This document shows, piece after piece, positions 3,837 through 61,924 of a DNA stretch of 64,000 nucleotides. Positions within the stretch are counted from its first letter, which is position 1, and each line of letters opens with the position of its first letter. The notes under the pieces were generated by a model, which saw nothing but the letters and a program-made list of their open reading frames with translations, was not told the DNA's origin and did not search any database. The stretch is from Hypanus sabinus (lineage: Eukaryota), in NCBI RefSeq assembly GCF_030144855.1, contig NC_082730.1:13764001-13828000 (forward strand). Reading direction: 5' to 3'. The translations under genes were made by a program, and so were the position numbers.

Positions 3837-3871
3837 AGTCAGAGATAGGGAAGATAGGCAGAATCTGTTTT

Positions 3872-3893
3872 GTGGGTGCTGGGGAATGGATTC
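3872..3893 (-). pseudogene. 5' stub of putative stalk exon (copy 1), donor deleted
   Basis: Acceptor gctccag|GAATCC is retained and matches 41414-41435. The sequence then jumps to the equivalent of 41051, a ~362-bp deletion that removes the exon 3' end and donor. Confidence 0.5.
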
Positions 3894-5970: not shown

Positions 5971-5979
5971 CTAGGAAAG

Positions 5980-6715: not shown

Positions 6716-6728
6716 AACCAATATCTCT

Positions 6729-12700: not shown

Positions 12701-12744
12701 TCCAAAACAGTACTCACTCCATGAGCGTCTCCCGCTGACTCTGT
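6729..12744 (-). mobile_element. Full-length L1-clade LINE (~6.0 kb) with 13-bp TSD
   Basis: TSD AACCAATATCTCT at 6716-6728 and 12745-12757; single copy in paralog at 44243-44255. ORF1 11705-12565 (NRSRRQNL..GLPDGIE, frameshifted); ORF2 from ATG 10918 to 7176 (EN, RT YADD; frameshifted); GAAA-type tail. Confidence 0.97.
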
Positions 12745-14097
12745 AACCAATATCTCTATGACTCTGTTGCATCCTCTCTAAACTGTAACATACTTTTCAA
12801 AGGTTAATATCAGAATTCTATTTTATTGCATTGGTGTGACAGCTTATTGGATCACAGCCAATCATATTGCGGTTCAATTTCAAAATTCAAAGTACATTTA
12901 ATGTCAAAGTATGAATACTATATACAGCCTTCAGATTTCTGTTTACAAACAGCTGCAAAACAAAAAAAATATAGAATCCATTAAAAAAACTGTCAAATGC
13001 ACAATGTGTCGTAAAAAAAATAAACCATGCAAAAAATAAAAGTGAGTAAGTAGATTTGGAACTGAAATTCACAAATGTGAGTCCACAGCCATACAACCAG
13101 TCATCACGGCAGCCAGTGAAGGAGCCGTTAATTACTGTACAGGCCACCGGCTCAGTTCGGCACAGAGACAGGTTAACCTCGTGGAGCAGCAAGCTGAAGA
13201 CTTGCCCATCCTTCACATAGGACTGACATTCCCACACAGTTTTGCATGAATTTTGAAAGCTTATTATCCTGTTCACATCCATGAAATGCAGCAGACTTGT
13301 TCATATCTGTACATAGACTCAAATTCCCTTCCCATATCTCAAAGTGAGTGAGGTATTTCAATCAGCTGTCTGAAACTCAGTTTCAGTGGCCAATAATTTA
13401 CTTCGACTGTTCACGAAATTCTAAAGCTAGTGAAGACCATAAGACACAGGAGCAGAATTAAACCATTTTTCTCGTAGAATCTGCCCCACTATTCCATCAT
13501 GGCTGAGTTATTATCCCACTCAATCCCATTCTCCTGATTTCTCCCTGTAACCTCTGATGCCTTTACTAAACATGAAACTATCATGCTCCATTTTCAATAC
13601 ACCCAATGATTTGGCCCCCAAAACCGTCTGTGGTAAGTAATTCCGCACATTCAACACCCTCTGGCTAAATAAATTTAGCCTACTCTGCTCTCTATTGATA
13701 AATAAATCAAAGAAAAGGACGTCCTTGCTTTCTGAGGCTGATTTTTCAGACAAGATTTCCCCATATGGAAACCATGTTTTATCAAATACCTCCAAGTACC
13801 CCAAAACCTTCTTCTTAACAATGGACTCGGAGGGTGGAGCAAAGTCAAGATGGTGCTAAATGGCAACTGCCTTGAAAGATGGAAACATAGAAATCCTACA
13901 CCACAATACAGGAACTTTGGCCCACAATGCTATGCTGAACACATACATACTTTAGAAATTACCTAGGGTTACATGCAATGCAATGTGTAGCTTCTACAGA
14001 TGTAAATTCCTTACCCTCACTGGAAGTACAAGAGCAGCAGTAATACAGTAATGAAAATAAATATTTAAATGTTTCCTCCCTTGGAATTAGAACTTAC

Positions 14098-14418
14098 TGG
14101 TGCCATTGATTTCTGTCACATAACTGCAGATCTCTCTGTTGTTGAAGACTGTCACATTAACCATTCCACTGGATTTTGCTCCAAGCCGATTTGAGGCTCT
14201 GCAGTAATATTGATGGTGCTGCTGGTTGAATGATTGACAATGCAGAGCCAGTTCATTGGTGCCTGATACCTTTCGATACCCAGATGAGGTTTGTTCATGC
14301 CAGCTGTACTGAATGGGAAGGGATCCCTGGAGGGACTCACAGGAAACTGACACTGAGCCCCCGAGACGCGAGACCTTTGCTGGTGACAGATATCGAAGCA
14401 CAGGAACGGACACGGGTT
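14098..14418 (-). CDS. Ig C2-type exon (FCRL-like), copy 1, intact
   Basis: EPVSVPVL..SVSCESLQGSLPIQYSWHE..YYCRASNRLG. Acceptor ttcccacag, donor A|GTAAGT; 321 nt; phase 1-1. Confidence 0.88.
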
Positions 14419-14479
14419 CTGTGGGAAAGAATTAAACATTCCGACACTGAAAATACATCTGAAAATCAAACACTCTTCT

Positions 14480-15112
14480 GCCACTTTATTAGATACACCT
14501 GTTCACCTGCTCATTAATGCAAATATCCAATTAGTTAATCATGTGGCAGCAATACAGTCCATATAAGGAAGCAGACATAGGCAAGAGGTTCTGTCTTTGT
14601 TTAGATCAGACATGAGAATGAGGAAGAAAGGTGATCTAAGTGACTTTGAAGATGAAATAATTGTTGCAGCCAGATGGTGAAGTTAGATAATCTCAGAAAG
14701 TATTGATCTTCTGGGATTTTCACCCACAACGGTCTCTGGAGTTTACAGAGAATGGTGTAAACAACATTAAAAAATCCAGTGAGCAGCAATTCTGTGAACA
14801 AAAATACCTTGTTTATGAGAGAGATCAGAGGAGAAAGGCCAGGATGGTCCAAGCTGACAGAAACATAGAACATAAAATAGTACAGCTCATTACAGGCCCT
14901 TCGGCCCACAATGTTGTGCCGATGTTCAAACCCTGCCTCCCATATGGTGACAGGAATTCAAATAAACATGTGTTATGACAGTGGTGTGCAGAAGAGCATC
15001 TGAAAATACAACATATCGAACCTTGAAGTGGATGGGCCACAGAAGCAGAAGACCAGGAATATCCAATCATTGGCCACTTTATGAGGTACAGGACGTACCA
15101 AATAAAGCAGCC
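14480..15112 (+). mobile_element. Non-autonomous Tc1-like DNA transposon remnant
   Basis: Degenerate TIR GCCACTTTATTAGATAC / GTACCAAATAAAGCAGCC; Tc1 HTH-like remnant; small nested SINE-like insert ~14861-14945; shorter paralog at 47300-47640. Confidence 0.6.
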
Positions 15113-15179
15113 CCTGCTTGTTTTAAGACAGTAATGCGAGATAACTGTCACATGTGACAAAAATGACAAATATATCACA

Positions 15180-15835
15180 AATGGCCTGACTTGGTCTAAC
15201 CAAGCAGAGTCCACTGCCAAGAAGGCCCACCAGCGCCTTTACTTCCTGAGAAAGCTGAAGAAATTTGGCCTGTCCACTAAAACCCTGACTAATTTTTGTA
15301 GATGCACCGTCGAAAGCATTCTTCTAGGGTGCATCAAAGCCTGGTATGGAAGCTGTCCTGTCCAAGACCAGAAGAAGCTGCAGAAGATCGTGAACATAGC
15401 CCAGCACATCACACAAAGCAATCTTCCATCCTTGGACTCACTTTATAACGCACACTGTCTGAGCAGAGCTGCCAGGATAATCAAGGACATGACCCACCCA
15501 GCCAATACACCTTTTGTCCCTCTTCCCTCTGGGAGAAGGTTCAGGAGCTTGATGATTCGTACGACCAGATTTGGGAACAGCTTCTTTCCAACTGTGATAA
15601 GACTGCTGAACGGATCCTGACCCATATCTGGGCTCTACCTTCCACATATCTGTACCTGACTTACACTAACTTTCTTTCCCTTTTCTATTTTCTAATTATG
15701 ATTTATAATTTAAATTTTTTTTATATTTACTTTGACTTGTACTTCAGGGAGCACGAAGTGCAGAATCAAATATCGCTATGATGATTGTACACTCTAGTAT
15801 CAATTGTTTGGTGACAATAAAGTAAAGTAGTAGTA
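15180..15835 (+). mobile_element. Rex-Babar-type LINE 3' fragment
   Basis: KKAHQRLYFLRKLKKFGL..CTVESIL..HPAN.PF..LPSGRRFRSL; (GTA)n-like tail. Paralog is split by L1 at 48038-52177. Confidence 0.75.
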
Positions 15836-16199
15836 GTAGTGTTTGCTGTCTTTCAGAAGAAAATGATATTGTGACTGGGTTTAGTGATGGAAACATGTGG
15901 CATTGATGTTAATGCAGAGATAGTGAGGGATGGACAGGGTGGGGACAGAGATCATGAGACATTTACTTTACTTGTAGATGTAAATTAAATCTCCTATTAA
16001 AAACTGCTCATAATTCCACAGTAATGTGAGATATCTGTTTGGTGGCTTTCAGGAGATAATTAATTTGTGACTGGGTTCAATGACCTACCGTATAGAAGAG
16101 AACATTTGACACTGATATGAATGTGGAGATAGTGAGGGATGGACAGAGTCTGGACACTTACTTTATGAAAAGTACAAAGTCAATCCCTGAGAAACCTAC

Positions 16200-16526
16200 C
16201 ATCAGATACTTGTAGATGAACATTAAACATCGGATCGTTCCCTGGTGTTGTAATTCCACAGCTGTACCATCCTGTATCTCCGGAGTGAAGATCCACCATA
16301 GTAACAGTAAATTTTCTCTTGCTCAGGTTCTGTTTATCTGTGATTGACACTCGTCCACTCCGTCCGTGTTGCCCTTTTGTTTCCACTAAAACTGAACATT
16401 GACGAGTCCGTCCATGGCACCAGTACTTTGCCTGTGAGTGGTAATGTGTTTCATAGTGACAATCGATTGTGATCGCTCTTCCCACAACTCCTCTTACAGA
16501 TTCCTCTGCCCACAATGCATCTGAAA
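16200..16526 (-). CDS. Ig V-domain exon B1, CD300/pIgR-like (N-terminal domain, copy 1)
   Basis: VSDALWAEESVRGVVGRAITIDCHY..KYWC..QC..GRVSITD..FTVTM..DTGWYSCG; four Cys as in CD300/pIgR V domains. Tandem acceptors give starts at 16526 or 16520; donor G|GTAGGT. Confidence 0.93.
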
Positions 16527-17169
16527 CTGAGGAGATTTGAGGAGAAAAGAATAACACAAGGCAAACAAATATTTTTGAACATGGTGGAGGAAGATCAGAT
16601 TCCAGCAATGGTAGACCTGATGAATCCACTGAAGGGGATTTCTCCAGCTGGATGTATTCTTCCCTCAGCTGCATTTCTCCCCTTTTCTCCTGATCTGTTT
16701 CAACCTCTTACACACCTCCAAACTCCACTCTCTTTCTTCCCCATTCCATCTGGATGTTGTGCTTCACCTCTCCTCAGTCCCTAACCACCTAATGGACCCA
16801 GTCTCACACCTCTTCCACTCCTTTCTACTTTATCTCATTCTCCACTCACATGATGCAGGGTTTTGATCCAAACTATTGACATTTCCCCTCCCCTTGACAG
16901 ATGGTGTTTGACCTGTTCAATTCCTCCAGGAGTGTATTCCGAACTCCAGTTTCCGACATCTTTAGTGTCGACAGGTATTCAAGCACTGTTGTGGAAAGAG
17001 TGAACATTCCTCAAACCAACATTGATTATGCAAATGTCCAGTCCTGTCTGTCAATCACAGGGGAGGAAATCAATCAAAACAAGCAAAGTCAGCAGCATTT
17101 TATTCACAGAGACCCGGTCAGGACTTCTCCTCCAAAGACGACCAGGCCGCAACTATGGAACAGATTACA

Positions 17170-18125
17170 ATGGATGTTTTGGGCTGAGATCTTTCATCAG
17201 GAGTGAAGAAAAAAGATGAGGAATCAAAGATAAAAGTTGGGGTTAGGGCTGGAAGACACACAAGATGATAGGTGTAACTGGGGGGAGGGAGAGTGTGTGA
17301 AATAAAGAGCTGGGAAGTTGTTTGATGAAACCTATACAGGGCTGGAGAAGGGGGAATGTAACAGGACTTGTCTATTGACATGATAGAAGGCCATGGAAGA
17401 AAGAAGAGGGGGAAGAGCACCAGAGGGAGGTGATAGGTAGGTAAGGAGATAAGGTGAGAAGGGAAAGGGGAATTGGGAATGATGAAAGGGGGCAGGGAAA
17501 TACAGGAAGGTAGAGAAATCGATGTTCATGCCATCAGGTTGGAGGCCACACAGATGGATTATAAAGTGTTGTTCCTCTTATCTAAGTGTAGCCTAATTAT
17601 GACAATGGAGGACGCCATGGCTTAACATGTCAGAATGGGAGTGGGAAGTGGAAGTAAAATGGATGGGAACAGGGAGATCCCACTTTTTCTGGCAGATGGA
17701 GTATAGGTGCTCAGTGAGGCGGTCTCCCAATCTACGTCAGGTCACACCAATATACAGGAGGCTGCACCGGGAGCACCGGATTCACAGGTAAAGTGTTGCC
17801 TCACCTGGAAGGACTGTCTGGGGTCCTGAATGGTAGTGAAGGATGAACTGCAGGGGCAGATGAGGCATTTGTTCTTCTTGCAAGAATAAGTGCCAGGAGG
17901 GAAATCAGTGGAGAGGGATGGATGGACATGGGAGTTGCATAGGGAGTGATTGTTGTGGAAAGCAGAAAGTGGGAGAGAGGGAAAGATGTGCTTGGTGGTG
18001 AGACCCCATTGGAGATGGTGGATGTTACAGAGAATTATGTGCTGGACACGGAAGCTGGTGGTTGGTAAACCTTGAGTCTCTGCGTCCAGCACATAATTCT
18101 TTGTAACTTCTGCCATCTCCAATGG
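17170..18125 (-). mobile_element. Penelope-like element fragment (GIY-YIG region)
   Basis: PPGTYSC..KCLICP..FTTIQ.P.QSFQVRQHFTCES; degenerate hammerhead-like CTGATGA..(G>A)AAA at 17177-17200. Confidence 0.75.
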
Positions 18126-19064
18126 GATCCCACCACTAGGCACATATTGCCCAACCCACTTTCTGACAAAGTCCTATAAATGCACAGTGGAGACTACTCT
18201 TATTGACAGCATCATGGCATGGTATGAAAACATCAATGCCTTGAACAGAAAAACCACAAAAGATAGTGTGTACAGCCCAATCCATAACTGGTAAACCCCT
18301 CTTCATTGCTGAGCACGTTGCTAAACTAAAAACAGCATCCATCATCCAGGCCTTGCTCTCTTCTTCCTGTGGCCATCAGGAAGCAGGTACAGGAGCCTCA
18401 TATCCCACACCACCAGGTTCAGGACCAGATATTACCCCTTAACCATCGGGCTTCTGAACCAGAGTGGATAATTTCACTGATCACTAAACTGATTTCACAA
18501 CCTATGGACTCACTTTTAAGGATTCTACAGCTCTAGTTCTCAAATATTACTTAGTAACTATTTACTTATTATTATTATTATTATTTTGCTTTTCTTTTGT
18601 TATTTGCACAATTGTTTGTCCTTTACACATTTGTTGTTTGTCTGTCTTTGTTCATGGGTAGTTTTTCATTGATTCTATTGTGTTACTTTGTATTTACTGT
18701 GATTGACCAAAAGTAAATGAATGTAAGGATAGTATGTGGTGACAATTGCAATGTGTACTTTAATAATAAATTTAAGTTTCGTTTCTGAGAATGATGCAAT
18801 AATTTGATCAACATAACACAAAAAAATGATTGAAATTGGGTACATTTCTAGTCAATTTTCAAAGGTCTTAAATATGAGTGAACACTGGAATTAAAAGTTG
18901 TGTAATGGACAAAATGAGTGTTTGCAGCTTGATGCAGTTTGCAATGGTCAGTGGGGTGTGAATCTGCAAATAGAAACTGCTACTTTTTCCAGAGTTGACA
19001 TGTAACTGGAACCCAAGGTGTACAATCAGCCTCGGAGCTTCTACATGAAGGGAGCTACAGTAAC

Positions 19065-19512
19065 TCTGCTATCTCCTCCAGCTCCATACACATTTCCACT
19101 GTCACACTTGATCGGTCCTATTCTCTCATGTCCTATCCTCTTGCTCTTCACATACTTGTAAAATGCCTTGGGGTTTTCCTTAATCCTGCTTGCCAAGGCC
19201 TTCTCTTGGCCCCTTCTGGCTCTCCTAATTTCATCCTTAAGTTCCTTCCGGCTAGTCTTGTAACTTTCTAGATCTCTATCATTACCTAATATTTTGAACC
19301 TTTCACAAGTTTTTTCTTTTCTTCATGATTAGATTTTCAACAGCCTTTGTGCACCGCAGTTCCTGTACCCTCCTATCTTTTCCCTGTCTCATTGCAACAT
19401 AGAATGTGCAACGTCAAACAAATATCCCCTGAGTATTTGGCACAGTTCTTCTGTACATTTCCTAAGAACATCTGTTCCCTATTTATGCTTCCAAGTTCCT
19501 GCCTGATAGCTT
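19065..19512 (-). mobile_element. CR1 fragment truncated at the Gypsy LTR
   Basis: Matches 55163-55614, where the CR1 continues to ~56790; here it stops abruptly at the LTR. Confidence 0.8.
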
Positions 19513-21252
19513 TGTAACACTTACCCAACAGGCTGGTATATGTCTATGGGAAAAGGAGATCCAGCCACACACCAATCCCACCGCCTGTACACGCAGGTGC
19601 TGTGAGAATCGAGTTTATGCCTCGCGCCCGCCCACAGTATCAAACCCACAACGAATACCGTTATGAAATACACTTTAAAGAGTTTACTAAAATTAAAAGA
19701 GTATTAGGCAATACAATATATCTATATGCAAAGTAAACAAACAAAAAGGCACCAACTTATCTAAGTTCAGTCAGTTTAGTGCACATCGTTGGAGCTCAAA
19801 CATCGAACCATTCGATCCATCGTCGCTTGCTTCCGACCTCCACGTCTTCGCACCTCGGACCACGCCCGGTGGTCTTCCGAGCAGTGCAGCGCACGTCCAC
19901 CTTCCTCGACGTCTTCCTCCAGCTCTCCCCCAAAAAGCCCGTGAAAACCCCTGCCCCAAGTTCCCAGCCTCACAAGACAAAATAACATTCCCCATTGGTT
20001 AACAAATGAATACAATTACCATATCAACAAGTATAAAGCAAAACAACTGCGAGAGAAACACTTATCAAAGAAGCATTCCTACTCTTAACAAACCAAAAAA
20101 CCCATTTTGAGTAACATACACAAAACATTGTACATTCTCTCCCCACCAGCAAATGTCATTCCCTCATGGCATTACCAGAGTTCCCCAATGCTTCTTGCAA
20201 CACACAAAACCCAACCCAGGTGCAGAAAACAGTGACATAACTACCCAGAGCAATAGAAATCACACTCGGTTCTCCAGGCACCACATATGTCAACCGCTCC
20301 GGGGGCGCCTAATCCTCTGAGATCTCCATACTCCTTCTGCCCCACTGGGCTCCCCAGGTCTACCTGACAGACCCTCATCCCCTTCTTCACGGGGGTCCTC
20401 CCTCACCTGAAATCTCTCCGGCTCACACTCAGGTTCCACCCTCTCTCCCCCCAATGTTGGCTGCCTCTCCATCTGACCCTCAATTCCCTCCTCTCACCCA
20501 ACTCAGTATGGGCCAGGAGCCTCCTCTTCTGGTACTGGAGCGCCAGTGAATGGGAACAGGGCCCACTCATCTGGGTCGTCCTCTTCCGAATCGGTAGCCA
20601 TTCCTGGGTGAGAGACCTGTCCCCACTCTTCAGCAGCGGGTCTTCCCTTTCTCCGCGCCCTCGCAGAGTCCTCGTACTAGGCGTAACCTCCCTCTCGGGC
20701 TCCTTATCCACCTGCACCGCTTGACCCAAGGGCAGCAGGTGATTCCGATGGAGTACCTTGATAAGCCCTTTCCCATCCTCAGGTTTCACCCGGTTCGGCA
20801 TCTGGCTCTCTATTACATAGGGGCTGGCCGCCCATCAATCGGCCAGCTTGTGCTTACCAGGGAGTCCCAAATTCCGTAAAAGGACCCGGTCGCCCGACAA
20901 ACTTCACCTTTCAATCATACCGCATGTTATTTCTCTGGTTTTGTTTGGTAGCCGCCGCCTCGGCCAACTCGTACGCCCGCTGTAACTCCCTCTTCATGTC
21001 GGATACATACTTTAGATAGGACTTCCCGGGTAATTCACCCACTTCACCCCCAAAACACAAGTCAATTGGCAACCTCGCTTCCCGCCCGAACATCAGATAA
21101 TAGGGCGAGTACCCTGTAGCATCATTGAGAGTACAATTGTAACAGTGAACCAATTGTCCAATATGATGACTCCATCTACTTTTCTGCCCAATCTCCAGCA
21201 TCCCGAGCATATCCAACAGGGTCCTGTTGAACCTCTCTGGCTGAGGATCTCC

Positions 21253-22473
21253 CTATGGGTGATAAGAGGTAGTCCTGGATTTCTCAACCCCAAGCATAGT
21301 CAGTAATTCATGGATAAGGCAGCTCTCAAAGTCCCGCCCCTGATCACTATGGATTCGCCTGGTAAGGCCGTAATGAACAAAATACTTTTCCCATAACACC
21401 TTCGCCACTGTCGTCGCCTTCTGATCCTTAGTGGGAAATGCCTGAGCATAGCGAGTGTAATGATCAGTGATGACCAAGACATTCACGGTGTTGTTGGTGT
21501 CAGGCTCAATCGACAGGAAATCCATACATACCAAGTCCAGAGGTCCCACACTCCACAAGTGCAACAGTGGAGCCACCGACGCTGGCAGGGTCTTCCTCCG
21601 GATGCAACGACTGCATCCCCTACAGTATTCTTCGACTTCCCCCCTCATCCGGGGCCAGTAGAACTGGTCTCTGAGTAATCCACAGGTCTTTTCCACCCCC
21701 AAGTGTCCAGAATTATCATGTAAGGCCTGGAGTACAGCCTGTTGATACTCCTGCGGCAGGACCAGTTGCCAACCGTGGGGTTGGTCCGGAGACGGCGTTA
21801 CCCGGTACAAGATTTGGTTCTTTAACTTTAACCGAGACCACTCCTTCAATAACAGAGGCACGAATGGGTGTTTCGCTTTCTCAGCCAACGCCACATCCCC
21901 CTTCTCGACCGCTCTCCACACTGTGCAAATGCCTGGGTCATTTTGCTGAGCAGCTGCCACTTCCCCCGGACTCAGTTCCAGCAACTGTTTAGTCCGCAGT
22001 GCGGTCAGGTCACAGTAAGCTAGGGGTATGGAGTCGTCAAAAACCCCCAAGTGGTCCACGGCTCTTTCCATCCTCCCTCTTCCCTCAGCCTTCACAGTGA
22101 TAGCAAACTGACACATCGCCTTCACTCCAGGGGCAGGGACACTCTCCCACTCATTGTCCTTCTCCTGTTCCCCCGGCTCCCGACGTGACAAAGCATCCGC
22201 ATCGACATTCTTGCTTCCGGGGCGGTACCTCAGGCTGAAATCATATACAGACAAGGCCACCAGCCACCGATGTCCTGTGGCATCCAGCTTCACCAAAGTC
22301 AAAATATAAGTGAGGGAATTGTTATCCGTTCTCACCTCAAACTTGGCTGGGTACAGGTAATCACCCAGCTTGTCCACCACCGCCCACTTCAGCGCCAGGA
22401 ACTCCAACTTGTGAGTGGGATAGTTTCTCTCAGATGGCGACGAGCTTCGGCTGACAAGGGCTACCGGCCTCAA
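21253..22473 (-). CDS. Gypsy RNase H - integrase reading frame
   Basis: NYPTHKLEFLALKWAV, VRTDNNSL, HDNSGHLG..C..C zinc finger, DFL..TDHYTRY..HSDQGRDFES; frameshifts at both ends. Confidence 0.9.
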   Translation of the reverse strand: MRPVALVSRSSSPSERNYPTHKLEFLALKWAVVDKLGDYLYPAKFEVRTDNNSLTYILTLVKLDATGHRWLVALSVYDFSLRYRPGSKNVDADALSRREPGEQEKDNEWESVPAPGVKAMCQFAITVKAEGRGRMERAVDHLGVFDDSIPLAYCDLTALRTKQLLELSPGEVAAAQQNDPGICTVWRAVEKGDVALAEKAKHPFVPLLLKEWSRLKLKNQILYRVTPSPDQPHGWQLVLPQEYQQAVLQALHDNSGHLGVEKTCGLLRDQFYWPRMRGEVEEYCRGCSRCIRRKTLPASVAPLLHLWSVGPLDLVCMDFLSIEPDTNNTVNVLVITDHYTRYAQAFPTKDQKATTVAKVLWEKYFVHYGLTRRIHSDQGRDFESCLIHELLTMLGVEKSRTTSYHP

Positions 22474-22620
22474 TGCTTTGCCATGCTCCTGGTACAGAAC
22501 AGCCCCTAGACCCTCTCGGCATCCGTGTGCAGCACATAGGGCTTCTGGGGATAGGCAAAAGCCAACACCGGGGCCTGGGTCAGTGCCCTTTTCAAAGATC
22601 GGAACGCCTCTTCACATCGA

Positions 22621-25572
22621 TCATCCCATCTCGAGCCAAAAGGTTCCGCCGGGTTCCAGTATCCTCCGGTATCCTGTCTCTGGTCCCCCGTCCTCTTCTT
22701 TCCCACCGGGGGATAGCCACACAACAGCTGAGTCAACGGATGACACACTTTTGCGTATCCCTTCACAAAATCGGCGGTAATACCCACAGAACCCCAAAAA
22801 TGAGCACAGAGCACCCACTTTCTGGGGTCTCGGCCAGGTGGTCACGGCCTCTATCTCGGTTGGATCAGTAGCCACTCCCTCTTGCGAAATGATATGGCCA
22901 ACGCAGCTAACCGATGACCTGCAGAACTGGCATTTGTCTAGGGAAAGCTTCAACCCTTCTTCATTAAGCCGGCCCAACACCTTCAACAGCCTCTCCTCAT
23001 GTTCCTCCAAAGTCAATCCGAAAACTATCAAATCGTCCAGGTACACCAGCACCTCTAACAGATTAATATCCCCCACAGTTCTCTCCATGAGCCTCTGGAA
23101 AGTGGCTGGGGCTCCCGATATGCCTTGGGGCATTTGTTCGAACTGAAAGAACCCCAGCGGGCAGATAAAAGCGGTCTTCTCTTTATCGGCCGCACTCATC
23201 GGGATCTGGTAATACCCACTTCTTAAATCCAGCACACTGAACCACTTCGCATCACTCAGGCAGGCCAACGCATCCTCGACTCTTGGGACAGTATATTGAT
23301 CAGGGACAGTTTGCCGATTCAAAGTCCTGTAGTCAACACACATGCGCATCCTCCCATTCTTCTTCCGTGCCACCACTATTGGGGACGCATAAGGACTTCG
23401 GGACTCAGCTACGATTCCGGCCTCCTTCAACTTGCACAAGTGCTGCCGCACATCCTCAACATCTGCCGCAGCCAGCCGCCGGGATCTCTCTCGGAACGGG
23501 GTGTCCTCCGTCACCCGGATGGTGTGGCGAGTGCTTTTGGAGCAGCCAGCATCAAACTCGCCCCGAGAAAAAACAGCTTCCATCTTCAGCATCTTCTCCA
23601 CTAGCCTGCATTTCCACTCCGGCGACACTGGGGAATCCCCGAAGTTAAAGGCTTCAGCGGTCAGCTCCCTTCGATGCTCCGATCCCTCCCCGTTAGGGGT
23701 CCGCACTGGTGCGCTGGACATTACCGTCACCGGGAACAGATGTGCCAGCGGCATTCCCCTCTTAAAGGTGATTTCTCTTGCCGTGGTGTACCTGACACTT
23801 ATAGCTATACGCCTCGCATGTACCACCCCTGGTCTCTGCACTTCGGGCCTCACCAGTGCCCCCGCCGGAAATCGTGTTTCCCCTTCAAGATCATCCGGGG
23901 CGTCTACTAACAGGGCTTCACCCGTCGGCACTCCTGGGAATCTGGGGGTCCCCATCACTAGGGCTACCTCCCCGGGTCGGATCACCTTGGGCCTCGCCTG
24001 CGTACACCACACCGTCCCTCGTTTACACTCCGGGTCCAGCCCTTGGGAGGCAACCCCTTCTTCGAACACCGCTCGAAACACTGGATGCACCGAGAGGGTC
24101 TCCAGAAAGTCTTCCCCCACTTTCTCCTTACAAGCTCCCAGGAGCCGTCGCACAACGGGGGAGTTAGTGCCCACCAGGAGGGCAGCACCACCGGTTTCCA
24201 CCAGGTCAGGACACACCGACACCAACGTCTCAATAGCTTCAGACACTCCCACATCGCCCTCCGAGAACTCCAATCTCACCGATAGGTACCCATCGTACGG
24301 GTAGTCACCCTCGCTCACACCCCAAATCTGCAGGGCGTCAAATGGGGTTACGGCCAAATGCTTTAGATATTGATTGTAGAAAGACCGGTACAATAAGGTC
24401 ACCTGCAATCCCATATCAAGAACGGCTTTTGCGTAAACTCCCTCTATCCGTAGACCCACACTGGCATGGGGTCCTACCAGCCCATCCGGAATAGAGGCGT
24501 GAGCACCCGGTGGTCTTCCGGCTGATCTCTGGGAACGTGTTCCTCCAGAGGCTCCAGTCCGTTCCCTCACTGAGCCTCTCCTAAGTTTCCCCGACATCTC
24601 TCCCTTCTTAGTCGCAGGGGGGCTTGTCCTCTGCGGGACTCCTTGTCTCTCACAATCCCACCTAAAGTGTCCCTCCTCTCCACAGCTATAGCACACCCTC
24701 GGCCGCCCACAGTCCCGCCTGAAATGCCCCTCTTTCCCACAGTTAAAGCACACGCTGCCTGCCGCCCCTCCTCTCCCAGGACGGCTCCCGCTCCCAACCC
24801 ACTGCACTGGTCGCCCCCGGGAGTGGGTACCTCCCCTGTCCCTCCCCTCCAGAGGGGGTTCCCTACTCCCCGGGGGATTATCAATCCTCCACCCAGCCAC
24901 CACTTCCTGTATCGCTGAGGATCGCTCCCGTAGGCCCGCGCCCCTTTTCCGCCCCAACGCTCTCTCTTCCTCTCGCACCTCTCTAATCAGTTGCCCGAAC
25001 GATGGAGGGGGGCCTTTCCTATAAGCCTGCCGGATAGTCCACGCCACCTTGTCCTCCTCCAGAGAGCCACTGAATATCTGACTCATCCTCACGCTAGCCA
25101 CGTCAGGCGCCTTCACTACCCCCCGGCGCTGCAATCCCGTAAGCATCCCCTCCATCCGAAATATGTACTCGGGGAGCTTTTCCCGGCTCCGTTGTTCCAG
25201 GCGTTGGAACTCTGCTAAAAGCAGCCAGGGTTCCCCTGACAACCCAAACGCTCCCTCCAAAACTTCTATGCATTCCTCCATTGAGGCCCCAGGCTTCTCA
25301 GCTTTCAACTCCCGGACGATTTTGGCTGCTAAACCCCTCAAACTTCCCACCAATCGCTGCCTCTTCTCCTCCTCCGAGCCTGGCCACTCCTCTAACATCA
25401 AAGACGTATGCTCGATCCAGGTCTCATAGTCCACCTCCCCGTCCGGAGTAGGCTTGGCTCCGGAGAACACCCCCAGCTTCAGCCGTGGCCTCTCGGCCAC
25501 TCCCACCAGGGAATTAAGTGCGGCTGCCAGCTCTGATGCTTCCACCCTACCTGGGGAGCGGGGCTTAGTCAC
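22621..25572 (-). CDS. Gypsy gag-pol (PNMA capsid, two CCHC knuckles, protease, RT), 983 aa open frame
   Basis: LGVFSG..YETW..LVGSLRG; CFNCGKEGHFRRDC and CYSCGEEGHFRWDC; LDMG (protease LDTG variant); LDLRSGYYQ, YLDD. The PNMA N-terminus continues in ORF 25565-26008 via a frameshift. Confidence 0.93.
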   Translation of the reverse strand: MTKPRSPGRVEASELAAALNSLVGVAERPRLKLGVFSGAKPTPDGEVDYETWIEHTSLMLEEWPGSEEEKRQRLVGSLRGLAAKIVRELKAEKPGASMEECIEVLEGAFGLSGEPWLLLAEFQRLEQRSREKLPEYIFRMEGMLTGLQRRGVVKAPDVASVRMSQIFSGSLEEDKVAWTIRQAYRKGPPPSFGQLIREVREEERALGRKRGAGLRERSSAIQEVVAGWRIDNPPGSREPPLEGRDRGGTHSRGRPVQWVGSGSRPGRGGAAGSVCFNCGKEGHFRRDCGRPRVCYSCGEEGHFRWDCERQGVPQRTSPPATKKGEMSGKLRRGSVRERTGASGGTRSQRSAGRPPGAHASIPDGLVGPHASVGLRIEGVYAKAVLDMGLQVTLLYRSFYNQYLKHLAVTPFDALQIWGVSEGDYPYDGYLSVRLEFSEGDVGVSEAIETLVSVCPDLVETGGAALLVGTNSPVVRRLLGACKEKVGEDFLETLSVHPVFRAVFEEGVASQGLDPECKRGTVWCTQARPKVIRPGEVALVMGTPRFPGVPTGEALLVDAPDDLEGETRFPAGALVRPEVQRPGVVHARRIAISVRYTTAREITFKRGMPLAHLFPVTVMSSAPVRTPNGEGSEHRRELTAEAFNFGDSPVSPEWKCRLVEKMLKMEAVFSRGEFDAGCSKSTRHTIRVTEDTPFRERSRRLAAADVEDVRQHLCKLKEAGIVAESRSPYASPIVVARKKNGRMRMCVDYRTLNRQTVPDQYTVPRVEDALACLSDAKWFSVLDLRSGYYQIPMSAADKEKTAFICPLGFFQFEQMPQGISGAPATFQRLMERTVGDINLLEVLVYLDDLIVFGLTLEEHEERLLKVLGRLNEEGLKLSLDKCQFCRSSVSCVGHIISQEGVATDPTEIEAVTTWPRPQKVGALCSFLGFCGYYRRFCEGIRKSVSSVDSAVVWLSPGGKEEDGGPETGYRRILEPGGTFWLEMG

Positions 25573-26837
25573 GACCCTCCTCCCACCTCCCTTTACTAGT
25601 GCCAGGCACCTCTCTGGGGTCCACCTCTAGCTCTAGTTCCTCAGCCTCATCCTCGGAGAGGGTGTGGAGCCCCCACGGCCCCGCCTCCCCCGGAACACTG
25701 ACCGTCGCTGGCAGTCCCACCGTCCTGACTTCAGCACTCGTACGAACCAACACCCAGCTAGACTCTACCTCTTTACCACACCGTCTAGCTACCAATTCTA
25801 CCTGCCCAATACCCTTCACCGAACTTAAGCCCCGCACTATCGCGTCTCCCGAAACTCGAAAATTCAATCCGCTCACTGCACAGGCATACTGTGCCGGTAC
25901 ACCTTCAAATTCGCACCAGCTAACAATCCGCTCTGCTGTCTGCGCGATTCCACAGCCCCGGACAATCCAATCCGGGATGAGCACCCCACAAATGTAACAC
26001 TTGCCCAACAGGCTGGTATATGTCTAGGGGAAAAGGAGATCCAGCCACACACCAATCCCACCGCCCGTACACGCAGAGAATCGAGTTTATGCCTCGCGCC
26101 CACCCACAGTATCAAACCCACTACAAATACCGTTATGAAATACACGTTAAAGAGTTTACTAAAATTAAAAGCGTATTAGGCAATACAATATATATGCAAA
26201 GGAAAAAAAACAAAAAGGCGCCAACTTAACAAAGTTCAGTCAGTTTAGTGCACATCGTTGGAGCTCAAACATCGAACCATTCGACCCCTCGTCGCTTGCC
26301 TCCGACCTCCACGTCTTCATACCTAGGACCACCCCCGGTGGTCTTCCGAGCAGTGCAGCGCACGGCCACCTTCCTTGGCGTCTTCCTCCCGCCAAAAAAA
26401 AAACCCGCAAAAACCCCTCCCCCAAGTTCCCCGCCTCACAAGACAAAATAACATTCCCCATTGGTTAACAAATGAATACAATTGCCATATCAACAAGTAT
26501 AAAGCAAAATAACTGCGAGAGAAACACTTATCAAAGAAGCATTCCTACTATTAACAAACCAAAAAAACCCATTTTGAGTAACATGCACAGGACATTGTAC
26601 AAAGAGGTGTTCTCAGCTCCCTTCTCTCCTCCCTGCACACTCACAACTGCAGGCTGGGTTTTGTTTCTTTCTTCCCCCACCCAACCACACAGCCCCCAGA
26701 CCCGATACAGGGTCTCCAACTGGAACAGCTTTTGCCTCCTTTGATGCTGCTGGACCCATACAATTCTTCCAGCATTGTGTCTGTGGTTCCACACCCCAGT
26801 AATGTTAAACCTATTTACGGAGTATTTTCTATCTTTG

Positions 26838-29800
26838 TGTAACCCCCGGGTCGCTTCAGGCTCGCTCAGCTCGTTCTTGTCTAGGGGGAGCAGCCTTCGG
26901 CCCCGCCAAACTGGGTAATCAGCTGGTGTGGATGCTGTGTGATGTCCCCGCCTCGCCAAAGAACGAACACAACACCATATGCGATTAAATGATTACAGTT
27001 TATAAAGATTACTATAACTAAGTAATTAATAATGATACAGTATACATGAAGAAAAAGAAAATAAAGAAAAGACGCCAAACTTATCAAAGTCCAAACCACT
27101 TCGTGCACAACTGTTGGAGCACAATTACTGAAGTCTTCTGGCCACCATTCGATCCCCTCCGAACTCCTCGACTCGCAACGCAGGACCACCTGAAGTGGTC
27201 AACCAAGCGCATCTATCTTCGTCTCCTCTCCTCGGGGAACCTCCTGGCCTTGGACCCCACTTGGGGTCCGTTCCTCGCCCAGCTTACAGCATCGCGTCCT
27301 CTCTCTCTCTCACCCCCTCACGCCGATCTCCCCAAAAACCCGCCAACAATAGCTTACAGACTAAGAAGAAATAACAACATTAATCCCAATTGATTTACAA
27401 AGGAATACAATTCTCGTTATCAGTAAATTTTAACCCAAACAAGCTTCCAGCACCCTCTCGCAACAAAGAAGCATTCCTACTTTTAAAACAAAGAAGCCAT
27501 TTTGATTAACATACGCAGTAACAAAGAAATAGAAACCCCCCTTTACACTCTCCCCCCACCAAATAAAAGTCATGTCCTCATGACTATTAAATAACTCGCC
27601 ACACTTCCTGCCAACACAAACCCTAACCCAGGCACAAACAGTGACATTGCTTCCCAAACAGTAAACCTCATGCGCTGTTCCTCAGGCGCTACATAGGCCA
27701 ACTTATCTGGGAGTTTCCTAACCCTCGGAGACCTCCGTACCCCCTCACCTAAACCCTTCAGGCTCAGACACAACTGGGGATACCTCGGGCCCGCTACCAA
27801 CTCATCTCTGAACCTCTCACTCATGCCCCCACTGCTACTCTGAGCCCCCTGCTGCTCACAGCTAACGCTTCCCACTACATCTGACTCAGTGAGAGAAGGG
27901 CCAAGGGTCTCTTCCTCAATCGAGGGGAAGTCAGCAAAAGGCAGCACGTACCACACATCCAGCACATCATCCTTCAAATCAGTATTCTTCCTCATTTCTG
28001 CGATAGGTAGCTGCTGTTTGATCATCTCGAAACGGAATCATGTGGCCTGCACTGCTCCTGCAGTCTCTTCAACCTCCTGCAATTGACAGATCAGCTTCTT
28101 CTGTGGCCCCTCCAACTCTCGCCACAGGCTCAGCAGTTCTGACTCATGCGTCCCGACCATCTCAGTCTGGGACGCAGTTACTCCAACAGCTTCCTCCACC
28201 CCGACCTAAAAAGCAGCAGTTAAAGATTGGTCAGCCTCCAGTTCAGTATTCACTGCCCTTATCTCCAGCTTTTTCTTCATCATGACTTCCTCCAGATCGA
28301 CTTTCAGGCTTTGCACTTCATTTGAACTGTCGATGGTCATCTTCAGGTTCCCTTCAAGTGTCCGGTTCCCTCTTCCGAGATTCATCCGCAATTTCTTCAC
28401 CTCCGCAAACTCCCCTCTCCAGGCTCTCAGTTTGCTGTTGCCCTCAGTCAGACAACTCTCTTCATTTTCTCCAACTTGTAAGTCCTCCCACTGGTTCCAG
28501 ATCACTCTCTCCAGTCTCTCCGTCTTCATTTCAAACTTGATTCCGTAGAGACAGTCACTCACGAGCTGCGACCTTCGCCAGCCCTGGCACGGGTCCAGAA
28601 AACACTTTAACTCTGTAGTTCCCAGCCGCTCCTGCAACGACCTCACTTCATATTCTCCTGAGGCAAATCCAAATACCAGGAGGTAATCCACATCTGCCAA
28701 AACTCCAAGCACCTCCACATCCCCCAGGGTCTTCCACATGCCCCGCGGGAACATTGCAAGGGCTCCGGATATGCCCTGTGGCATCTTTTCGGACTGGAAG
28801 AATCCTAGGGAACTTATAACGGCCGTCTTCTCCTTGTCGGCCTCACTCATCGGGATCTGGCAACATCCACTCCTCATATCCAGCACCTTAAACCACTTCG
28901 CACCACTCAGACAGGCCATCGCCTCTTCGGCCCTCAGGGCCGTATTCTGGTCACTGACAGTGCGCCTCTTCAGCGCAATATAATCCACACACACGCTGCC
29001 TACATCTTCCATGGGCCAGTTGCCGCAACCTCTCTCTCACCGAGGAGTCTTCAGCAGTCAACTCCCCTCCCTCGTGGTATGTCGCAGCGTCCAGTAATCA
29101 CCCTCAGATACTTCCCTCAGGCTGTACCACCACCGGCTCTTATTTGAATTCGGTACCGGCCCAATGCTGCTACACATGTCCGCACAAGCAGCTCGAAACT
29201 CTGGGTGCATCGACAATGCCTCCAAACAACGCTCACCCCCCTCCTCCGGGCAGGCCCCCAAGCGCATCAGCAGGGTATTGGTTCTCTCTAGAACCGAAAC
29301 GCTTCCCTTCTCAACAGTGTCCGGACACATCAGCATTAATGATTCACAAACCTCAGTCACCCCCACATTTGCCTCTAAGAACTCCATTTTCACTGACCAA
29401 CAACCGTCGTCTAGATAGTCAGCGGCACTGGTACCCCAAATCTCCAGTGCCCTCAACGTTGTCCGTCAAGGGTGTTCCCTTACAATAACCGCTTCCAATA
29501 ACGGTTGTAAAACAAACTGTACAGCAATTTAACCGGCGCCCCGGTGTCGAGGATGGCTTTAACTTGGCTTCCATCCATCCGTAACGACACCTGAGTGCGT
29601 GGTCCCTCTAAGCCATCAGGAATAGGGTCTGCTCCTTTCGGGAGTTCCGTGCTACATTGCTGGCAACATGCTCCCCCAGAGACCCCAAGCCGTTCCCCCA
29701 CTGGGCCTCCTCTAAGTTTCCCAACACCTCTCGGATCAACTGAACAACTGAGGGAGGAGCTGATCCCTTTGACAGATCCCCCTGGCACCGCAAGCAATTT

Positions 29801-31073
29801 ATCTGCCCCCCAGCCAAAAGGGATACCCTAAAAACTTTCCACCAATCTCCTGCCACGGATATGATAAGCCGCCCAGCACCGGCATTTGACTTCCAGTCGA
29901 ACCAACCGCATTTTCCCACACTTTCCCAGAACTGGTAGCTGTCACTTCGGGGTAATTGTACCTGACAGTCCTAACAAAGTCACCAGCCCGCCTACTCAAA
30001 CTTTCAACCAATCCCTGTCGCCTTCTCTCAGCCAAGCACTGCCACTCACCCAACAACTGAAGGGTCCGCTCCGCCCACGCCTCCACCTCTTTAGGACTGG
30101 ACGTTATTCCAACAACCGGGCGGAGCCCACCAACCCTTCCCCACTCTCTTAACAGCATAGACAGCCCATGGCCCCTCCACCATTTCGTCAACGCAAGTCG
30201 AAACTCGATCAACGCCCTCCGGGGCACCAAAAGCCACCCCACCCCAACACAGATGTAGAGATAACCGGCAAAGGCACACCCGCAAAGGCAAACCAGCTCT
30301 TCGCCGCAGACATAATTTAAAGAGGGTGATCACACAGCTTCCACAGAAATCAATCCGGACGAGCACCCCACAATTTAACTCCTTGGGTCACCTCAGGCTC
30401 GCTCAGCTCATTCTCGTCTAGGGGGAGCAGCTTTCGGCCCCGCCAAACTGGGTAATCAGCTTGGGTGGATGCTGTGTGATGTCCCCGCCCCGCCAAAGAA
30501 CAAACAGGACACCATATGCAATTAAATGATTACAATTTATAAAAATTACTATAACTGATTAATAACCATACAGTATACATGAAGGAAAAGAAAATAAAGA
30601 AAAGGTGCCAAACCACTTCGTGCACAACCGTTGGAGCTCAATTACTGAAGTCTTTTGGCCACCATTCGATCCCCTCCGAACTCCTCGACTCGCAACTCAG
30701 GACCACCCGAAGTGATCAACCAAGCACATCTATCCTCGTCTCCTCTCCTCGGGGTACCTTCTGGCCTTGGACCCCCTTGGGATCCATTCCTCGCCCAGTT
30801 TATAGCATCACGTCCTCTCTCTCTCTCCCCCTCACGCCTATCTCCCCAAAAGCCCGTCAACAATAGCTTACAGACTCAGAAGAAAGAACAACATTAATCG
30901 CAATTGGTTTACAAAGGAATACAATTCTTGTTATCAGTAAATTTTAACCCAAACAAGCTTTCAGCACCCTCTCACAACAAAGACGCATTCCTACTTTTAA
31001 CAAAACAAAGAAGCCATTTTGATTAATATACGCAGTAACAAAGAAAAAGAAGAAACCACCCCCCCCCTTTACG
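26838..31073 (-). mobile_element. Non-autonomous Gypsy derivative with 4-bp TSD
   Basis: LTRs 26838-27547 and 30374-31073; TSD TTTG at 26834-26837 and 31074-31077; PBS TGGGGTGCTCGTCCGGATT 30352-30370; PPT 27548-27560. Degenerate gag, PR (LDTG) and RT (YLDD reads ADVD); no RNaseH or integrase core; empty site in paralog at ~61503. Confidence 0.95.
28008..28529 (-). pseudogene. MYH16: Captured sarcomeric myosin heavy-chain rod fragments (MYH16-like) inside the LTR element
   Basis: [81 protein letters not shown]; EEAVGVTASQTEMVGTHESELLSLWRELE; [36 protein letters not shown]. These align by eye to three separate myosin rod regions. Paralog assignment is from memory. Confidence 0.82.
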
Positions 31074-31365
31074 TTTGCATATCTGCACATACTTTACCAT
31101 CTCTGCTACAGAAACGGTGCATTAGACACAAATTAACAGATCATTCAAATGAACAAGTAAACGGCAGACGTTAGGGATTTGAGACAAAAACAGAACGTGC
31201 TGGAAATACCTCGTATGTCAGGCTGAAACTCTGGGAAGTGAACGGGAGTCAAGAGGCTAGAGTCTGAAACTTTTACTGTTTCCTTTTTCACGGGTACAGT
31301 TTGACCTGCTGAGTGTTTCCTGCATTTACCATTCTCTGTAACATCCCGCACTGGTCATCACTCAC

Positions 31366-61835: not shown

Positions 61836-61924
61836 TGTTCTGTTGACAGTGACCAACCGGGCAGCACTTGTCTGTCGCTCAGCTCTTTGCTCTAAGAACT
61901 AAATGAATGACTGAGACAAATAGG

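What the first reader, a model, noticed from the sequence alone, without database searches (positions are those of the whole stretch)
28008..28529. Non-autonomous LTR retrotransposon has captured a myosin heavy-chain (MYH16-like) sequence
Seen: the TSD-flanked 4.2-kb element has no RNaseH or integrase core. In their place are ~520 bp reading ...[79 protein letters not shown] / EEAVGVTASQTEMVGTHESELLSLWRELE / [36 protein letters not shown]. Knowledge (recalled): sarcomeric myosin rods contain [39 protein letters not shown] and ELEEAKKKLAQRLQEAEE, in that order and up to hundreds of residues apart. MYH16 has NSKL, LKMTID, DLEEV, LEI..VN, QSL and ELLKLRRELE, which fit best. Inference: a spliced myosin mRNA was transduced by RT template switching, then shortened by deletions (one at an RELE/EELE microhomology). 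This would make the element a retroviral-style gene-capture vehicle carrying a muscle-gene fragment.
Basis: partly seen in the sequence, partly recalled or inferred. Interest (0 to 1): 0.9.

Follow-up and report, generated by a model that had tools for sequence, protein, structure and literature searches.

The report
Ray retrotransposon carrying myosin rod fragment
A defective jumping gene in a ray genome really does carry a spliced, shortened piece of a muscle myosin gene in place of most of its own enzymes, a rare but already described kind of gene capture rather than a new mechanism.

Summary
Window 26838-31073 (minus strand) is a 4.2-kb non-autonomous Ty3/gypsy-type LTR element. Its 4-bp target duplication is confirmed by an empty paralogous site in the same window. 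Between a truncated RT with a short RNase H scrap and an integrase C-terminal tail lie about 530 bp (about 27990-28520) homologous to the rod of striated-muscle myosin heavy chain. A profile of the family hits only myosin II chains in the PDB (E 1.6e-13), in three colinear blocks. The closest relative (53% identity) is an intron-bearing electric-ray gene that NCBI names MYH16 or myosin-6-like. The insert runs uninterrupted across at least four positions where myosin genes have introns, so it came from spliced RNA. Its two large internal gaps are not exon skips. The same fusion occurs in annotated proteins of Hemitrygon, Hypanus and Mobula, so this is an old, amplified family. This copy is decayed, with two in-frame stops in the insert and broken gag, protease and RT. 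Capture by template switching is inferred, not shown. The structure matches "LTR-mediated retroposition" (Tan et al. 2016), so it is a new member of a known kind. Assignment to MYH16 rests on database names only. Interest is moderate.

The parts
26838..31073 (-). Whole non-autonomous Ty3/gypsy-type LTR element (4236 bp). It is flanked by a 4-bp target-site duplication at 26834-26837 and 31074-31077.
   Evidence: LTR pair; termini and flanks read; empty paralogous site at about 61505/61508 with a single copy of the target.
30374..31073 (-). 5' LTR in element sense. Both of its tips have drifted from the TG..CA tips kept by the other LTR.
   Evidence: K2P 0.076 between the LTRs.
30350..30373 (-). 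Primer-binding-site-like stretch directly inside the 5' LTR. It is nearly identical to that of the autonomous neighbour.
   Evidence: The tRNA identity was not tested.
29680..30242 (-). gag remnant (PNMA-type capsid region). It is broken by at least one frameshift and at least one in-frame stop, and the zinc-knuckle region has no counterpart.
   Evidence: Pfam PNMA E 6e-7; tblastn counts against the neighbour's gag-pro-RT, 32% identity.
29127..29722 (-). Protease and following region, a remnant. It has at least one frameshift, and the roughly 220-codon stretch between it and RT in the neighbour is missing.
   Evidence: 48% identity to the neighbour; weak RVP hit.
28569..28994 (-). Reverse transcriptase remnant (about 144 codons), open in this copy but cut short at its C-terminal side. 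The catalytic box is not conserved.
   Evidence: BLASTP 58% identity, E 1e-45, to neighbour residues 744-887; Pfam RVT_1 below cutoff.
28521..28568 (-). RNase H scrap (about 16-20 codons), all that is left of RNase H, in frame with RT.
   Evidence: Mobula relative P0008 residues 70-122 match the neighbour's RNase H at E 1.7e-8. The window ORF gives 38% identity over 21 residues, which is weak on its own.
27990..28520 (-). Myosin heavy-chain rod insert: sense orientation, in frame with pol, intronless. It has three colinear blocks of about 105, 30 and 55 codons, matching MYH7B-type residues of about 1001-1122, 1163-1195 and 1384-1445. It contains two in-frame stops and no frameshift.
27573..27989 (-). 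Integrase C-terminal tail remnant in the same frame, ending at the frame's terminal stop. The zinc-binding and core domains of integrase are absent.
   Evidence: tblastn to neighbour 20170-20595 in the integrase frame, 31% identity over 150 residues, E 1.7e-6; DNA match 27549-27746 to 20136-20337.
27548..27572 (-). Polypurine-tract-like run directly upstream of the 3' LTR, shared with the neighbour.
26838..27547 (-). 3' LTR in element sense, with TG..CA tips.
19513..26601 (-). Neighbouring autonomous-type Gypsy element: PNMA-type gag, zinc knuckles, protease, RT, RNase H and integrase, with LTRs at 19513-20134 and 25993-26601. It is a related family, not the parent. It served here as the reference for what the non-autonomous element has lost, and it has no myosin-like part.

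Best explanation
This is one old, decayed copy of a family of non-autonomous Ty3/gypsy-type LTR retrotransposons of myliobatiform rays. In a founder element, nearly all of RNase H and the zinc-binding and core domains of integrase were replaced by a partial, spliced copy of the rod region of a striated-muscle myosin heavy-chain mRNA. The source was of the ancient MYH16/MYH7B-like kind. Its closest living relative found here is an intron-bearing gene of the electric ray Narcine.

Shown:
- The insert is host-derived.
- It lacks introns.
- It lies in sense orientation and in frame between pol remnants.
- It lies inside a TSD-flanked LTR element that keeps primer-binding-site-like and polypurine-tract-like signals.
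- It recurs with the same junctions in several ray species.

Inferred: during reverse transcription inside a particle, the polymerase switched from element RNA to a co-packaged myosin mRNA and back at short similarities (LTR-mediated retroposition). Further jumps or deletions between in-phase repeated acidic motifs of the rod removed two long stretches. Because LTRs and priming signals were kept, the chimera was then copied in trans by autonomous relatives and spread. In this copy the myosin piece is most likely a neutral passenger.
For: Myosin homology:
- Myosin-7 residues 1005-1101 at E 1e-7, with lamins far weaker.
- the family profile hits only striated myosin II, best E 1.6e-13, in three colinear stretches, and the MYH7(1361-1425) fragment at E 2.7e-11.
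- pairwise E 2e-14, 5e-4 and 0.06 for this copy; 3e-7 and 5e-5 for the third block in relatives.
- 53% identity, E 2e-34, to Narcine P0138.

Intronless origin:
- Exon junctions of bird MYH7B were read from locus L001, and the insert maps across three of them.
- Narcine isoforms P0138 and P0010 define a 29-codon cassette. Its 3' border coincides with MYH7B junction 1049/1050. The insert holds the cassette and both neighbouring exons abutted.
- The two large gaps fall inside MYH7B exons.

Element anatomy. Empty site.

Not native to this kind of pol: the autonomous neighbour has contiguous RT, RNase H and integrase and no myosin-like match.

Family spread: searches give 11 annotated proteins from Hemitrygon akajei, Hypanus sabinus, Mobula hypostoma and M. 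birostris. Some start in RT or RNase H and run into the same myosin blocks and the same tail.

Precedent for the mechanism and the structure: PMC5131818.
Against: - No DNA of other copies could be fetched, so shared junctions and LTR context in other species are seen only through predicted proteins.
- The parental mRNA sequence of this species is unknown, so microsimilarity at the two element/myosin fusion points could not be examined at nucleotide level.
- Pfam Myosin_tail_1 is never reached by the insert or its relatives. Even the Narcine gene scores below cutoff.
- Intron positions are taken from a bird MYH7B gene and from isoform differences in another ray, not from the source gene itself.
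- Mobula proteins P0007 and P0018 carry about 25 more myosin-like residues upstream, which a single simple capture does not explain.
- Five junctions all in frame is more than expected for random joins, which leaves some room for past selection on an open frame.
Confidence: 0.85

Rival explanations
1. The likeness is generic coiled-coil similarity. On this view a charged heptad-rich stretch of no myosin ancestry, or a chance open frame, matches myosin only by composition.
For: Pfam Myosin_tail_1 is not hit. Identity to canonical myosins is only 33-38%. Two unrelated long coiled-coil proteins appear among the weak hits of the exhaustive search.
Against: In the PDB only striated myosin II passes E 0.01 with the family profile, and other coiled coils such as lamins stay at 0.1-3. 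Three blocks map in myosin order to fixed positions in every myosin tested. Identity to a ray myosin-rod gene is 53% at E 2e-34, with shared distinctive motifs that Myosin-7 lacks.
Confidence: 0.02
2. The segment is a native part of this Gypsy lineage's pol, for example a coiled-coil linker, and was not captured.
For: It is in frame with RT, the RNase H scrap and the integrase tail. It is also present in all family members seen.
Against: The related autonomous element next door has RT, RNase H, Integrase_H2C2 and rve contiguous and no myosin-like match. The insert sits where about 600 codons of RNase H and integrase are missing. It is closer to an intron-bearing host gene than to anything in a retroelement.
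Confidence: 0.03
3. The myosin piece entered a DNA copy of the element by another route, and the chimera was amplified only afterwards. Possible routes are a LINE-made processed pseudogene landing in the element, or double-strand-break repair that patched in cDNA.
For: The end product would look the same after long decay. Capture replacing a deleted region is also compatible with repair-mediated filler DNA.
Against: The insert is an internal piece of the coding region with no mRNA 3' end, no A-run at its 3' border and no duplication around it. It replaces element sequence rather than interrupting a continuous element. Those are the hallmarks listed for LTR-mediated rather than LINE-mediated retrocopies (PMC5131818).
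Confidence: 0.08
4. The pol-myosin fusion is, or once was, a selected product. It could be an expressed chimeric protein or a source of small RNAs against the parental myosin gene, rather than a passenger.
For: All five joins are in frame (RT to RNase H scrap, scrap to myosin, the two internal myosin joins, myosin to integrase tail). About 1.4 kb of this copy carries no frameshift. NCBI pipelines predicted genes on several copies. LTR-mediated retrocopies are often co-transcribed in sense with their LTRs (PMC5131818).
Against: This copy has two in-frame stops in the insert, broken gag and protease, and an RT without a conserved catalytic box. Annotated relatives are all fragments of 135-328 residues starting at different internal points. 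Identity between copies is about the same in the RT part (79%) as in the myosin parts (71-82%), so no extra constraint shows. In-phase joins are expected when jumps occur between repeated codon motifs of a coiled coil.
Confidence: 0.05

Closest known systems
LTR-mediated retrocopies of animals (Tan et al. 2016, Genome Res 26:1663, PMC5131818)
   Same: A partial spliced host mRNA replaces part of the internal ORFs of an LTR retrotransposon. Both LTRs are kept, and there is no poly(A) or duplication around the retrocopy. Orientation is sense, often in frame. The chimera behaves as a pseudo or non-autonomous LTR element open to further copying cycles. [quoted passage not shown]
   Different: The published cases are young and mostly single-copy or polymorphic. 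This one is old (LTR K2P 0.076). It belongs to a family seen in at least two ray families, comes from a cartilaginous fish, and its cargo is itself internally shortened to three blocks. Microsimilarity at the fusion points, the published hallmark, could not be checked here.
Maize Bs1 and rice LTR elements with captured gene fragments (Elrouby and Bureau 2001, 2010; Wang et al. 2006, as cited in PMC5131818)
   Same: A non-autonomous LTR retrotransposon carries intronless host gene fragments and has been re-copied as an element.
   Different: Those are plant Copia or Gypsy hosts, and Bs1 carries pieces of three genes. Here a single animal gene contributed three blocks.
Acutely transforming retroviruses with transduced cellular genes (textbook knowledge)
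   Same: Spliced host sequence replaces replication genes, is often fused in frame to a viral ORF, and the element becomes defective and helper-dependent. Recombination during reverse transcription is the accepted route.
   Different: This is not a retrovirus: it has no env, and its gag is of the PNMA/Gypsy type. The cargo is a structural coiled-coil fragment with no evident growth function, and it is germ-line fixed and ancient.
HERV-K capture of FAM8A1 in human (Jamain et al. 2001, as cited in PMC5131818)
   Same: A vertebrate LTR element holds a processed host gene copy that is now a pseudogene.
   Different: That case is a single locus with an endogenous retrovirus backbone, not an amplified family.
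Striated-muscle myosin heavy chains of the ancient group (MYH16, MYH7B, MYH15; PMC6402096)
   Same: The insert is homologous to rod residues of about 1000-1445. It shares distinctive motifs with a ray gene that NCBI names MYH16. One junction of that gene has no counterpart in MYH7B, in line with the extra introns reported for MYH16.
   Different: Only about 190 of roughly 1100 rod codons are present, there is no motor domain, and the Pfam tail model is not reached. Orthology to MYH16 was not tested by phylogeny.

Membership tests
LTR retrotransposon, Ty3/gypsy type, non-autonomous derivative | Two direct long terminal repeats with TG..CA tips | tested here: met
   LTRs of 710 and 700 bp with 92.9% identity. 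One LTR keeps TG..CA; the other has a drifted base at each tip.
LTR retrotransposon, Ty3/gypsy type, non-autonomous derivative | Target-site duplication, and an empty site without the element | tested here: met
   4-bp repeat at both flanks. The paralogous block at about 61505/61508 has one copy and no element.
LTR retrotransposon, Ty3/gypsy type, non-autonomous derivative | Primer-binding site and polypurine tract next to the LTRs | tested here: met
   Both are present and nearly identical to those of the autonomous neighbour. Which tRNA primes was not tested.
LTR retrotransposon, Ty3/gypsy type, non-autonomous derivative | Gene order gag, protease, RT, RNase H, integrase | tested here: met
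   Remnants lie in that order: PNMA-type gag, protease, RT, RNase H scrap and integrase tail.
LTR retrotransposon, Ty3/gypsy type, non-autonomous derivative | Lacks its own working enzymes (non-autonomous) | tested here: met
   RNase H is reduced to about 20 codons and the integrase zinc and core domains are absent. RT is truncated with a non-conserved catalytic box, and gag and protease are broken.
LTR-mediated retrocopy / transduced host cDNA | Host-derived sequence lying between the LTRs and replacing element sequence | tested here: met
LTR-mediated retrocopy / transduced host cDNA | Insert lacks the introns of the parental gene | tested here: met
   By proxy. The insert is continuous across bird MYH7B junctions 1049/1050, 1098/1099 and 1406/1407 and across the cassette-exon borders of the Narcine gene. 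The species' own parental locus was not available.
LTR-mediated retrocopy / transduced host cDNA | Short shared similarity (microsimilarity) at both fusion points | not testable with these tools
   This needs nucleotide sequence of the parental mRNA and of the parental element; only proteins of relatives could be fetched.
LTR-mediated retrocopy / transduced host cDNA | No poly(A) tail and no duplication around the insert (unlike LINE-made retrocopies) | tested here: met
   No A-run at the 3' border, and the insert is an internal coding piece.
Striated-muscle myosin II heavy-chain rod | Significant, colinear sequence similarity to the rod | tested here: met
Striated-muscle myosin II heavy-chain rod | Reaches the Pfam Myosin_tail_1 (PF01576) gathering score | tested here: not met
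   No hit for the insert pieces or for any of 11 family members. The Narcine relative scores 19.6 bits against a cutoff of 38.1. The insert is therefore a derived fragment, not a member in the Pfam sense.
Striated-muscle myosin II heavy-chain rod | Heptad and 28-residue charge periodicity; predicted coiled coil | not tested
   No structure prediction or periodicity analysis was run.
MYH16 orthologue as the source gene | Groups with MYH16 rather than other sarcomeric myosins | tested here: inconclusive
   The closest relative P0138 and five family members are named MYH16 or myosin-16-like by NCBI; other members are named myosin-6-like, cardiac-like or striated-like. The best full-length hit in the exhaustive search is MYH7B-type. 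No authenticated MYH16 sequence could be fetched, and no tree was made.

The most novel reading that the evidence does not exclude
The in-frame pol-myosin-rod fusion was not a mere passenger. One version of this reading is that the coiled-coil piece was kept because it let the defective element's product associate with helper particles or with itself. Another is that transcripts of the many copies feed small-RNA pathways that act on the parental MYH16-like gene of rays. In the two species seen here that gene is annotated only as short, odd-looking fragments.
Probability: 0.06. Interest if true: 0.75.

Novelty: new member of a known kind. Interest (0 to 1): 0.42.

Why it matters
It adds a cartilaginous-fish example to LTR-mediated retroposition. 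It is an ancient one that succeeded as a multi-copy family across ray lineages, whereas the animal cases described so far are mostly young and single-copy. It shows that such chimeras can persist and spread for tens of millions of years. It also has a practical consequence for annotation. Gene-prediction pipelines have named copies of this element 'MYH16', 'myosin-16-like', 'myosin-6-like' and 'cardiac muscle isoform-like' in several ray genomes. Myosin gene counts and MYH16 presence calls in batoids are therefore contaminated by transposon cargo. It does not reveal a new mechanism.

Tried and rejected
- Pfam scans of the three stop-free pieces, of the whole RT-myosin ORF and of 11 relatives gave no Myosin_tail_1 hit, even at E 10 for the pieces. 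I rejected this as negative evidence, because the true ray myosin-like gene also falls below the cutoff.
- The third piece alone gave nothing in the PDB, and BLASTP against the neighbour's last annotated ORF failed. tblastn in all frames then showed it to be the integrase tail.
- Fetching DNA of other copies failed: P0005 and P0138 are not on record, and the P0003 sample file is too large.
- The length window of the word-indexed protein search prevented pulling full-length MYH16-type chains with the insert. The search with the Narcine protein returned mainly unnamed marine transcript fragments.
- Literature searches for a prior report of a myosin-carrying retrotransposon found none.
- I considered a LINE-made processed pseudogene, a native pol domain and a generic coiled coil, and rejected them for the reasons given under the rival explanations.
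- I ran no structure prediction, because a long helix would not discriminate between the explanations.
Full report
**What is at the coordinates.** That frame is also the frame of an RT remnant upstream. It continues to a terminal stop beside a polypurine run, with two internal stops and no frameshift. A Hypanus relative aligns to it as a single tblastn stretch from 28529 to 27747 at 82% identity, and another from 28919 to 27954 at 76%.

**The element.**
- Direct repeats at 26838-27547 and 30374-31073 are LTRs, with 92.9% identity over aligned bases and K2P 0.076.
- One LTR keeps TG..CA tips; the other has a drifted base at each tip.
- A 4-bp repeat flanks the element.
- The window contains a segmental duplication of its Ig-domain gene cluster. 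The paralogous block runs straight from the left flank into the right flank at about 61505/61508 with a single copy of the target. This is an empty site. It fixes the element's ends and shows that it inserted after the duplication.
- Inside lie, in order, a PNMA-type gag remnant, a protease remnant, an RT remnant, about 20 codons of RNase H, the myosin-like insert, and about 130 codons of integrase C-terminal tail.

**Count of breaks, measured against the autonomous neighbour.**

| Gene | State in this copy |
|---|---|
| gag | At least one frameshift, at least one in-frame stop, zinc-knuckle region lost |
| Protease region | At least one frameshift; about 220 following codons lost |
| RT | Open over the 144 retained codons but truncated; catalytic box not conserved |
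| RNase H | All but a scrap deleted |
| Integrase | Zinc-binding and core domains deleted |
| Myosin insert | Two in-frame stops, no frameshift |

If a neutral rate of 1-2 x 10^-9 per site per year is assumed (my assumption, not measured for rays), the LTR divergence suggests an insertion roughly 20-40 million years old.

**The neighbour.** Directly beside it, at 19513-26601 on the minus strand, lies an autonomous-type Gypsy element. It has PNMA-type gag, zinc knuckles, RT, RT_RNaseH, Integrase_H2C2 and rve. It is 58% identical in RT. It shares an almost identical primer-binding-site-like stretch, polypurine tract and LTR tips. It has no myosin-like sequence. It is therefore a related family of the kind that could supply proteins in trans, but not the parent.

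**Is the insert really myosin?**
- The first stop-free piece matches PDB Myosin-7 residues 1005-1101 at E 1e-7 and Myosin-4 at 2e-6. Lamins reach only 0.1-3.
- The second piece alone gives weak hits at two separate rod positions. The third gives none.
- An exhaustive phmmer search of 1.84 billion representatives found 15 hits. Eleven are relatives of the insert itself. The best full-length protein is a lungfish MYH7B-type chain at 33% identity, E 4.6e-4.
- A profile of the window piece plus ten relatives hits only striated myosin II chains in the PDB, best E 1.6e-13. The three colinear stretches fall at Myosin-4 990-1114, 1152-1182 and about 1385-1425. The isolated MYH7(1361-1425) fragment scores E 2.7e-11.
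- Pairwise against the lungfish chain, this copy maps to 1018-1111 (E 2e-14), 1163-1189 (5e-4) and 1385-1408 (0.06). Better-preserved relatives give 3e-7 to 5e-5 for the third block, up to residue 1438.
- Pfam Myosin_tail_1 is never reached, so the insert is a derived fragment rather than a Pfam member. The closest true myosin-like gene also stays under the cutoff.

**The closest host gene.** Narcine bancroftii proteins P0138 (NCBI: putative uncharacterized protein MYH16 isoform X2) and P0010 (myosin-6-like isoform X4) are isoforms from one 375-Mb contig.
- The window's first piece is 53% identical to P0138 over 108 residues, E 2e-34.
Myosin-7 lacks them at the same positions (compare).
- The Narcine gene extends colinearly with myosin on both sides of the captured part, matching bird MYH7B 873-1147.
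- A teleost protein shares its unusual N-terminus.
- It is therefore a host gene, not element cargo.
- Whether it is a true MYH16 orthologue was not tested. Names given by sources to family members vary: MYH16, myosin-16-like, myosin-6-like, cardiac-like, striated-like.

**Spliced origin.** I fetched a bird MYH7B locus (L001) and read its exon junctions by exact k-mer mapping of the protein. In the relevant part they fall at residues 991/992, 1049/1050, 1098/1099, 1128/1129, 1258/1259, 1301/1302, 1340/1341 and 1406/1407.
- The insert maps to 1024-1111, 1169-1195 and 1391-1425 of that protein; relatives extend to 991 and 1445.
- It therefore crosses 1049/1050, 1098/1099 and 1406/1407 with no intervening DNA.
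- Independently, the two Narcine isoforms differ by a 29-codon cassette and an alternative end. By the offsets, the cassette's 3' border falls on MYH7B 1049/1050 and the alternative end on 1128/1129.
- The cassette's 5' border, at about 1020/1021, has no counterpart in MYH7B. This agrees with the report that MYH16 has extra introns (PMC6402096).
- The window insert contains the cassette and both neighbouring exons abutted.
- The two long gaps between blocks start and end inside MYH7B exons, so they are not exon skips.
- In the profile alignments both flanks of the second gap match the same short acidic motif of myosin. The first gap also lies between similar motifs. This fits jumps or deletions between in-phase repeats and would also explain why the frame is kept.

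**A family, not a one-off.** Annotated proteins of Hemitrygon akajei, Hypanus sabinus (Dasyatidae), Mobula hypostoma and M. birostris (Myliobatidae) carry the same blocks in the same order.
- Several begin in the RT or in the RNase H scrap, and several run into the same integrase tail.
- Identity to this copy is 89-91% for the closest stingray copies and about 50-60% for Mobula copies.
- The RT part (79%) and the myosin parts (71-82%) are about equally conserved against the Hypanus copy P0005, so no extra constraint on the cargo is visible.
- All annotated relatives are fragments of 135-328 residues.
- DNA of those loci could not be fetched.

**Mechanism and comparison with what is known.** The anatomy is the one described as LTR-mediated retroposition (PMC5131818):
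- a partial mRNA copy replaces part of the internal ORFs;
- both LTRs are kept;
- there is no poly(A) and no duplication around the retrocopy;
- orientation is sense, often in frame;
- the chimera is open to further copying as a pseudo-LTR element.

[quoted passage not shown] It cites maize Bs1, rice elements and HERV-K/FAM8A1 as earlier examples. The template-switch step is inferred here by analogy, because the published hallmark, microsimilarity at the fusion points, could not be tested without parental nucleotide sequences. I found no report of a myosin-carrying element or of this ray family.

**Verdict.**
The caveats are that small RNase H and integrase remnants survive, that the MYH16 label is unproven, and that the mechanism is inferred.
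- It is a new member of a known kind. It is of moderate interest for its age, its spread as a family in cartilaginous fishes, and the mis-annotation of its copies as myosin genes.

- Their ends abut the two in-frame stops, so the notebook indirectly shows where those stops are.

Noticed in passing
window 1-19500 and 36700-64000 (e.g. 18500-19512 matches 54607-55614; 26602-26836 matches 61271-61505; 31079-31851 matches 61508-62308): Large segmental duplication of an immunoglobulin-domain gene cluster, with blocks 79-96% identical. ORFs include V-set and Ig domains at 16183-16674(-) and 14090-14413(-). It supplied the empty site for the element.
   Followed up: partly
window 19513-26601 (minus strand): Autonomous-type Gypsy element with a 983-codon open gag-pro-RT frame, PNMA-type gag and two zinc knuckles. 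RNase H and integrase lie in further frames, and the LTRs are 91% identical. It is also absent from the paralogous block.
   Followed up: partly
window 55615-61270: In the paralogous block, 5.6 kb of unrelated sequence without long ORFs occupies the place taken by the autonomous element in the other block. Its nature was not determined.
   Followed up: no
proteins P0138, P0010 (Narcine bancroftii) and P0141 (Aldrovandia affinis): A short myosin-rod-like gene with an unusual N-terminus, resembling a diverged head-rod junction, is shared between an electric ray and a teleost. It is annotated only as fragments of about 200-234 residues. It may be a decaying or re-purposed MYH16-like gene.
   Followed up: partly
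proteins P0007 and P0018 (Mobula): These relatives carry about 25 more myosin-like residues upstream of the point where the window copy joins the RNase H scrap. Either the original capture was longer or the gene models add a foreign exon.
   Followed up: no
public annotations of Hypanus sabinus, Hemitrygon akajei, Mobula hypostoma and M. birostris: Copies of this transposon cargo are annotated as MYH16, myosin-16-like, cardiac or striated myosin heavy-chain-like genes. This is a source of error for myosin gene counts in rays.
   Followed up: partly
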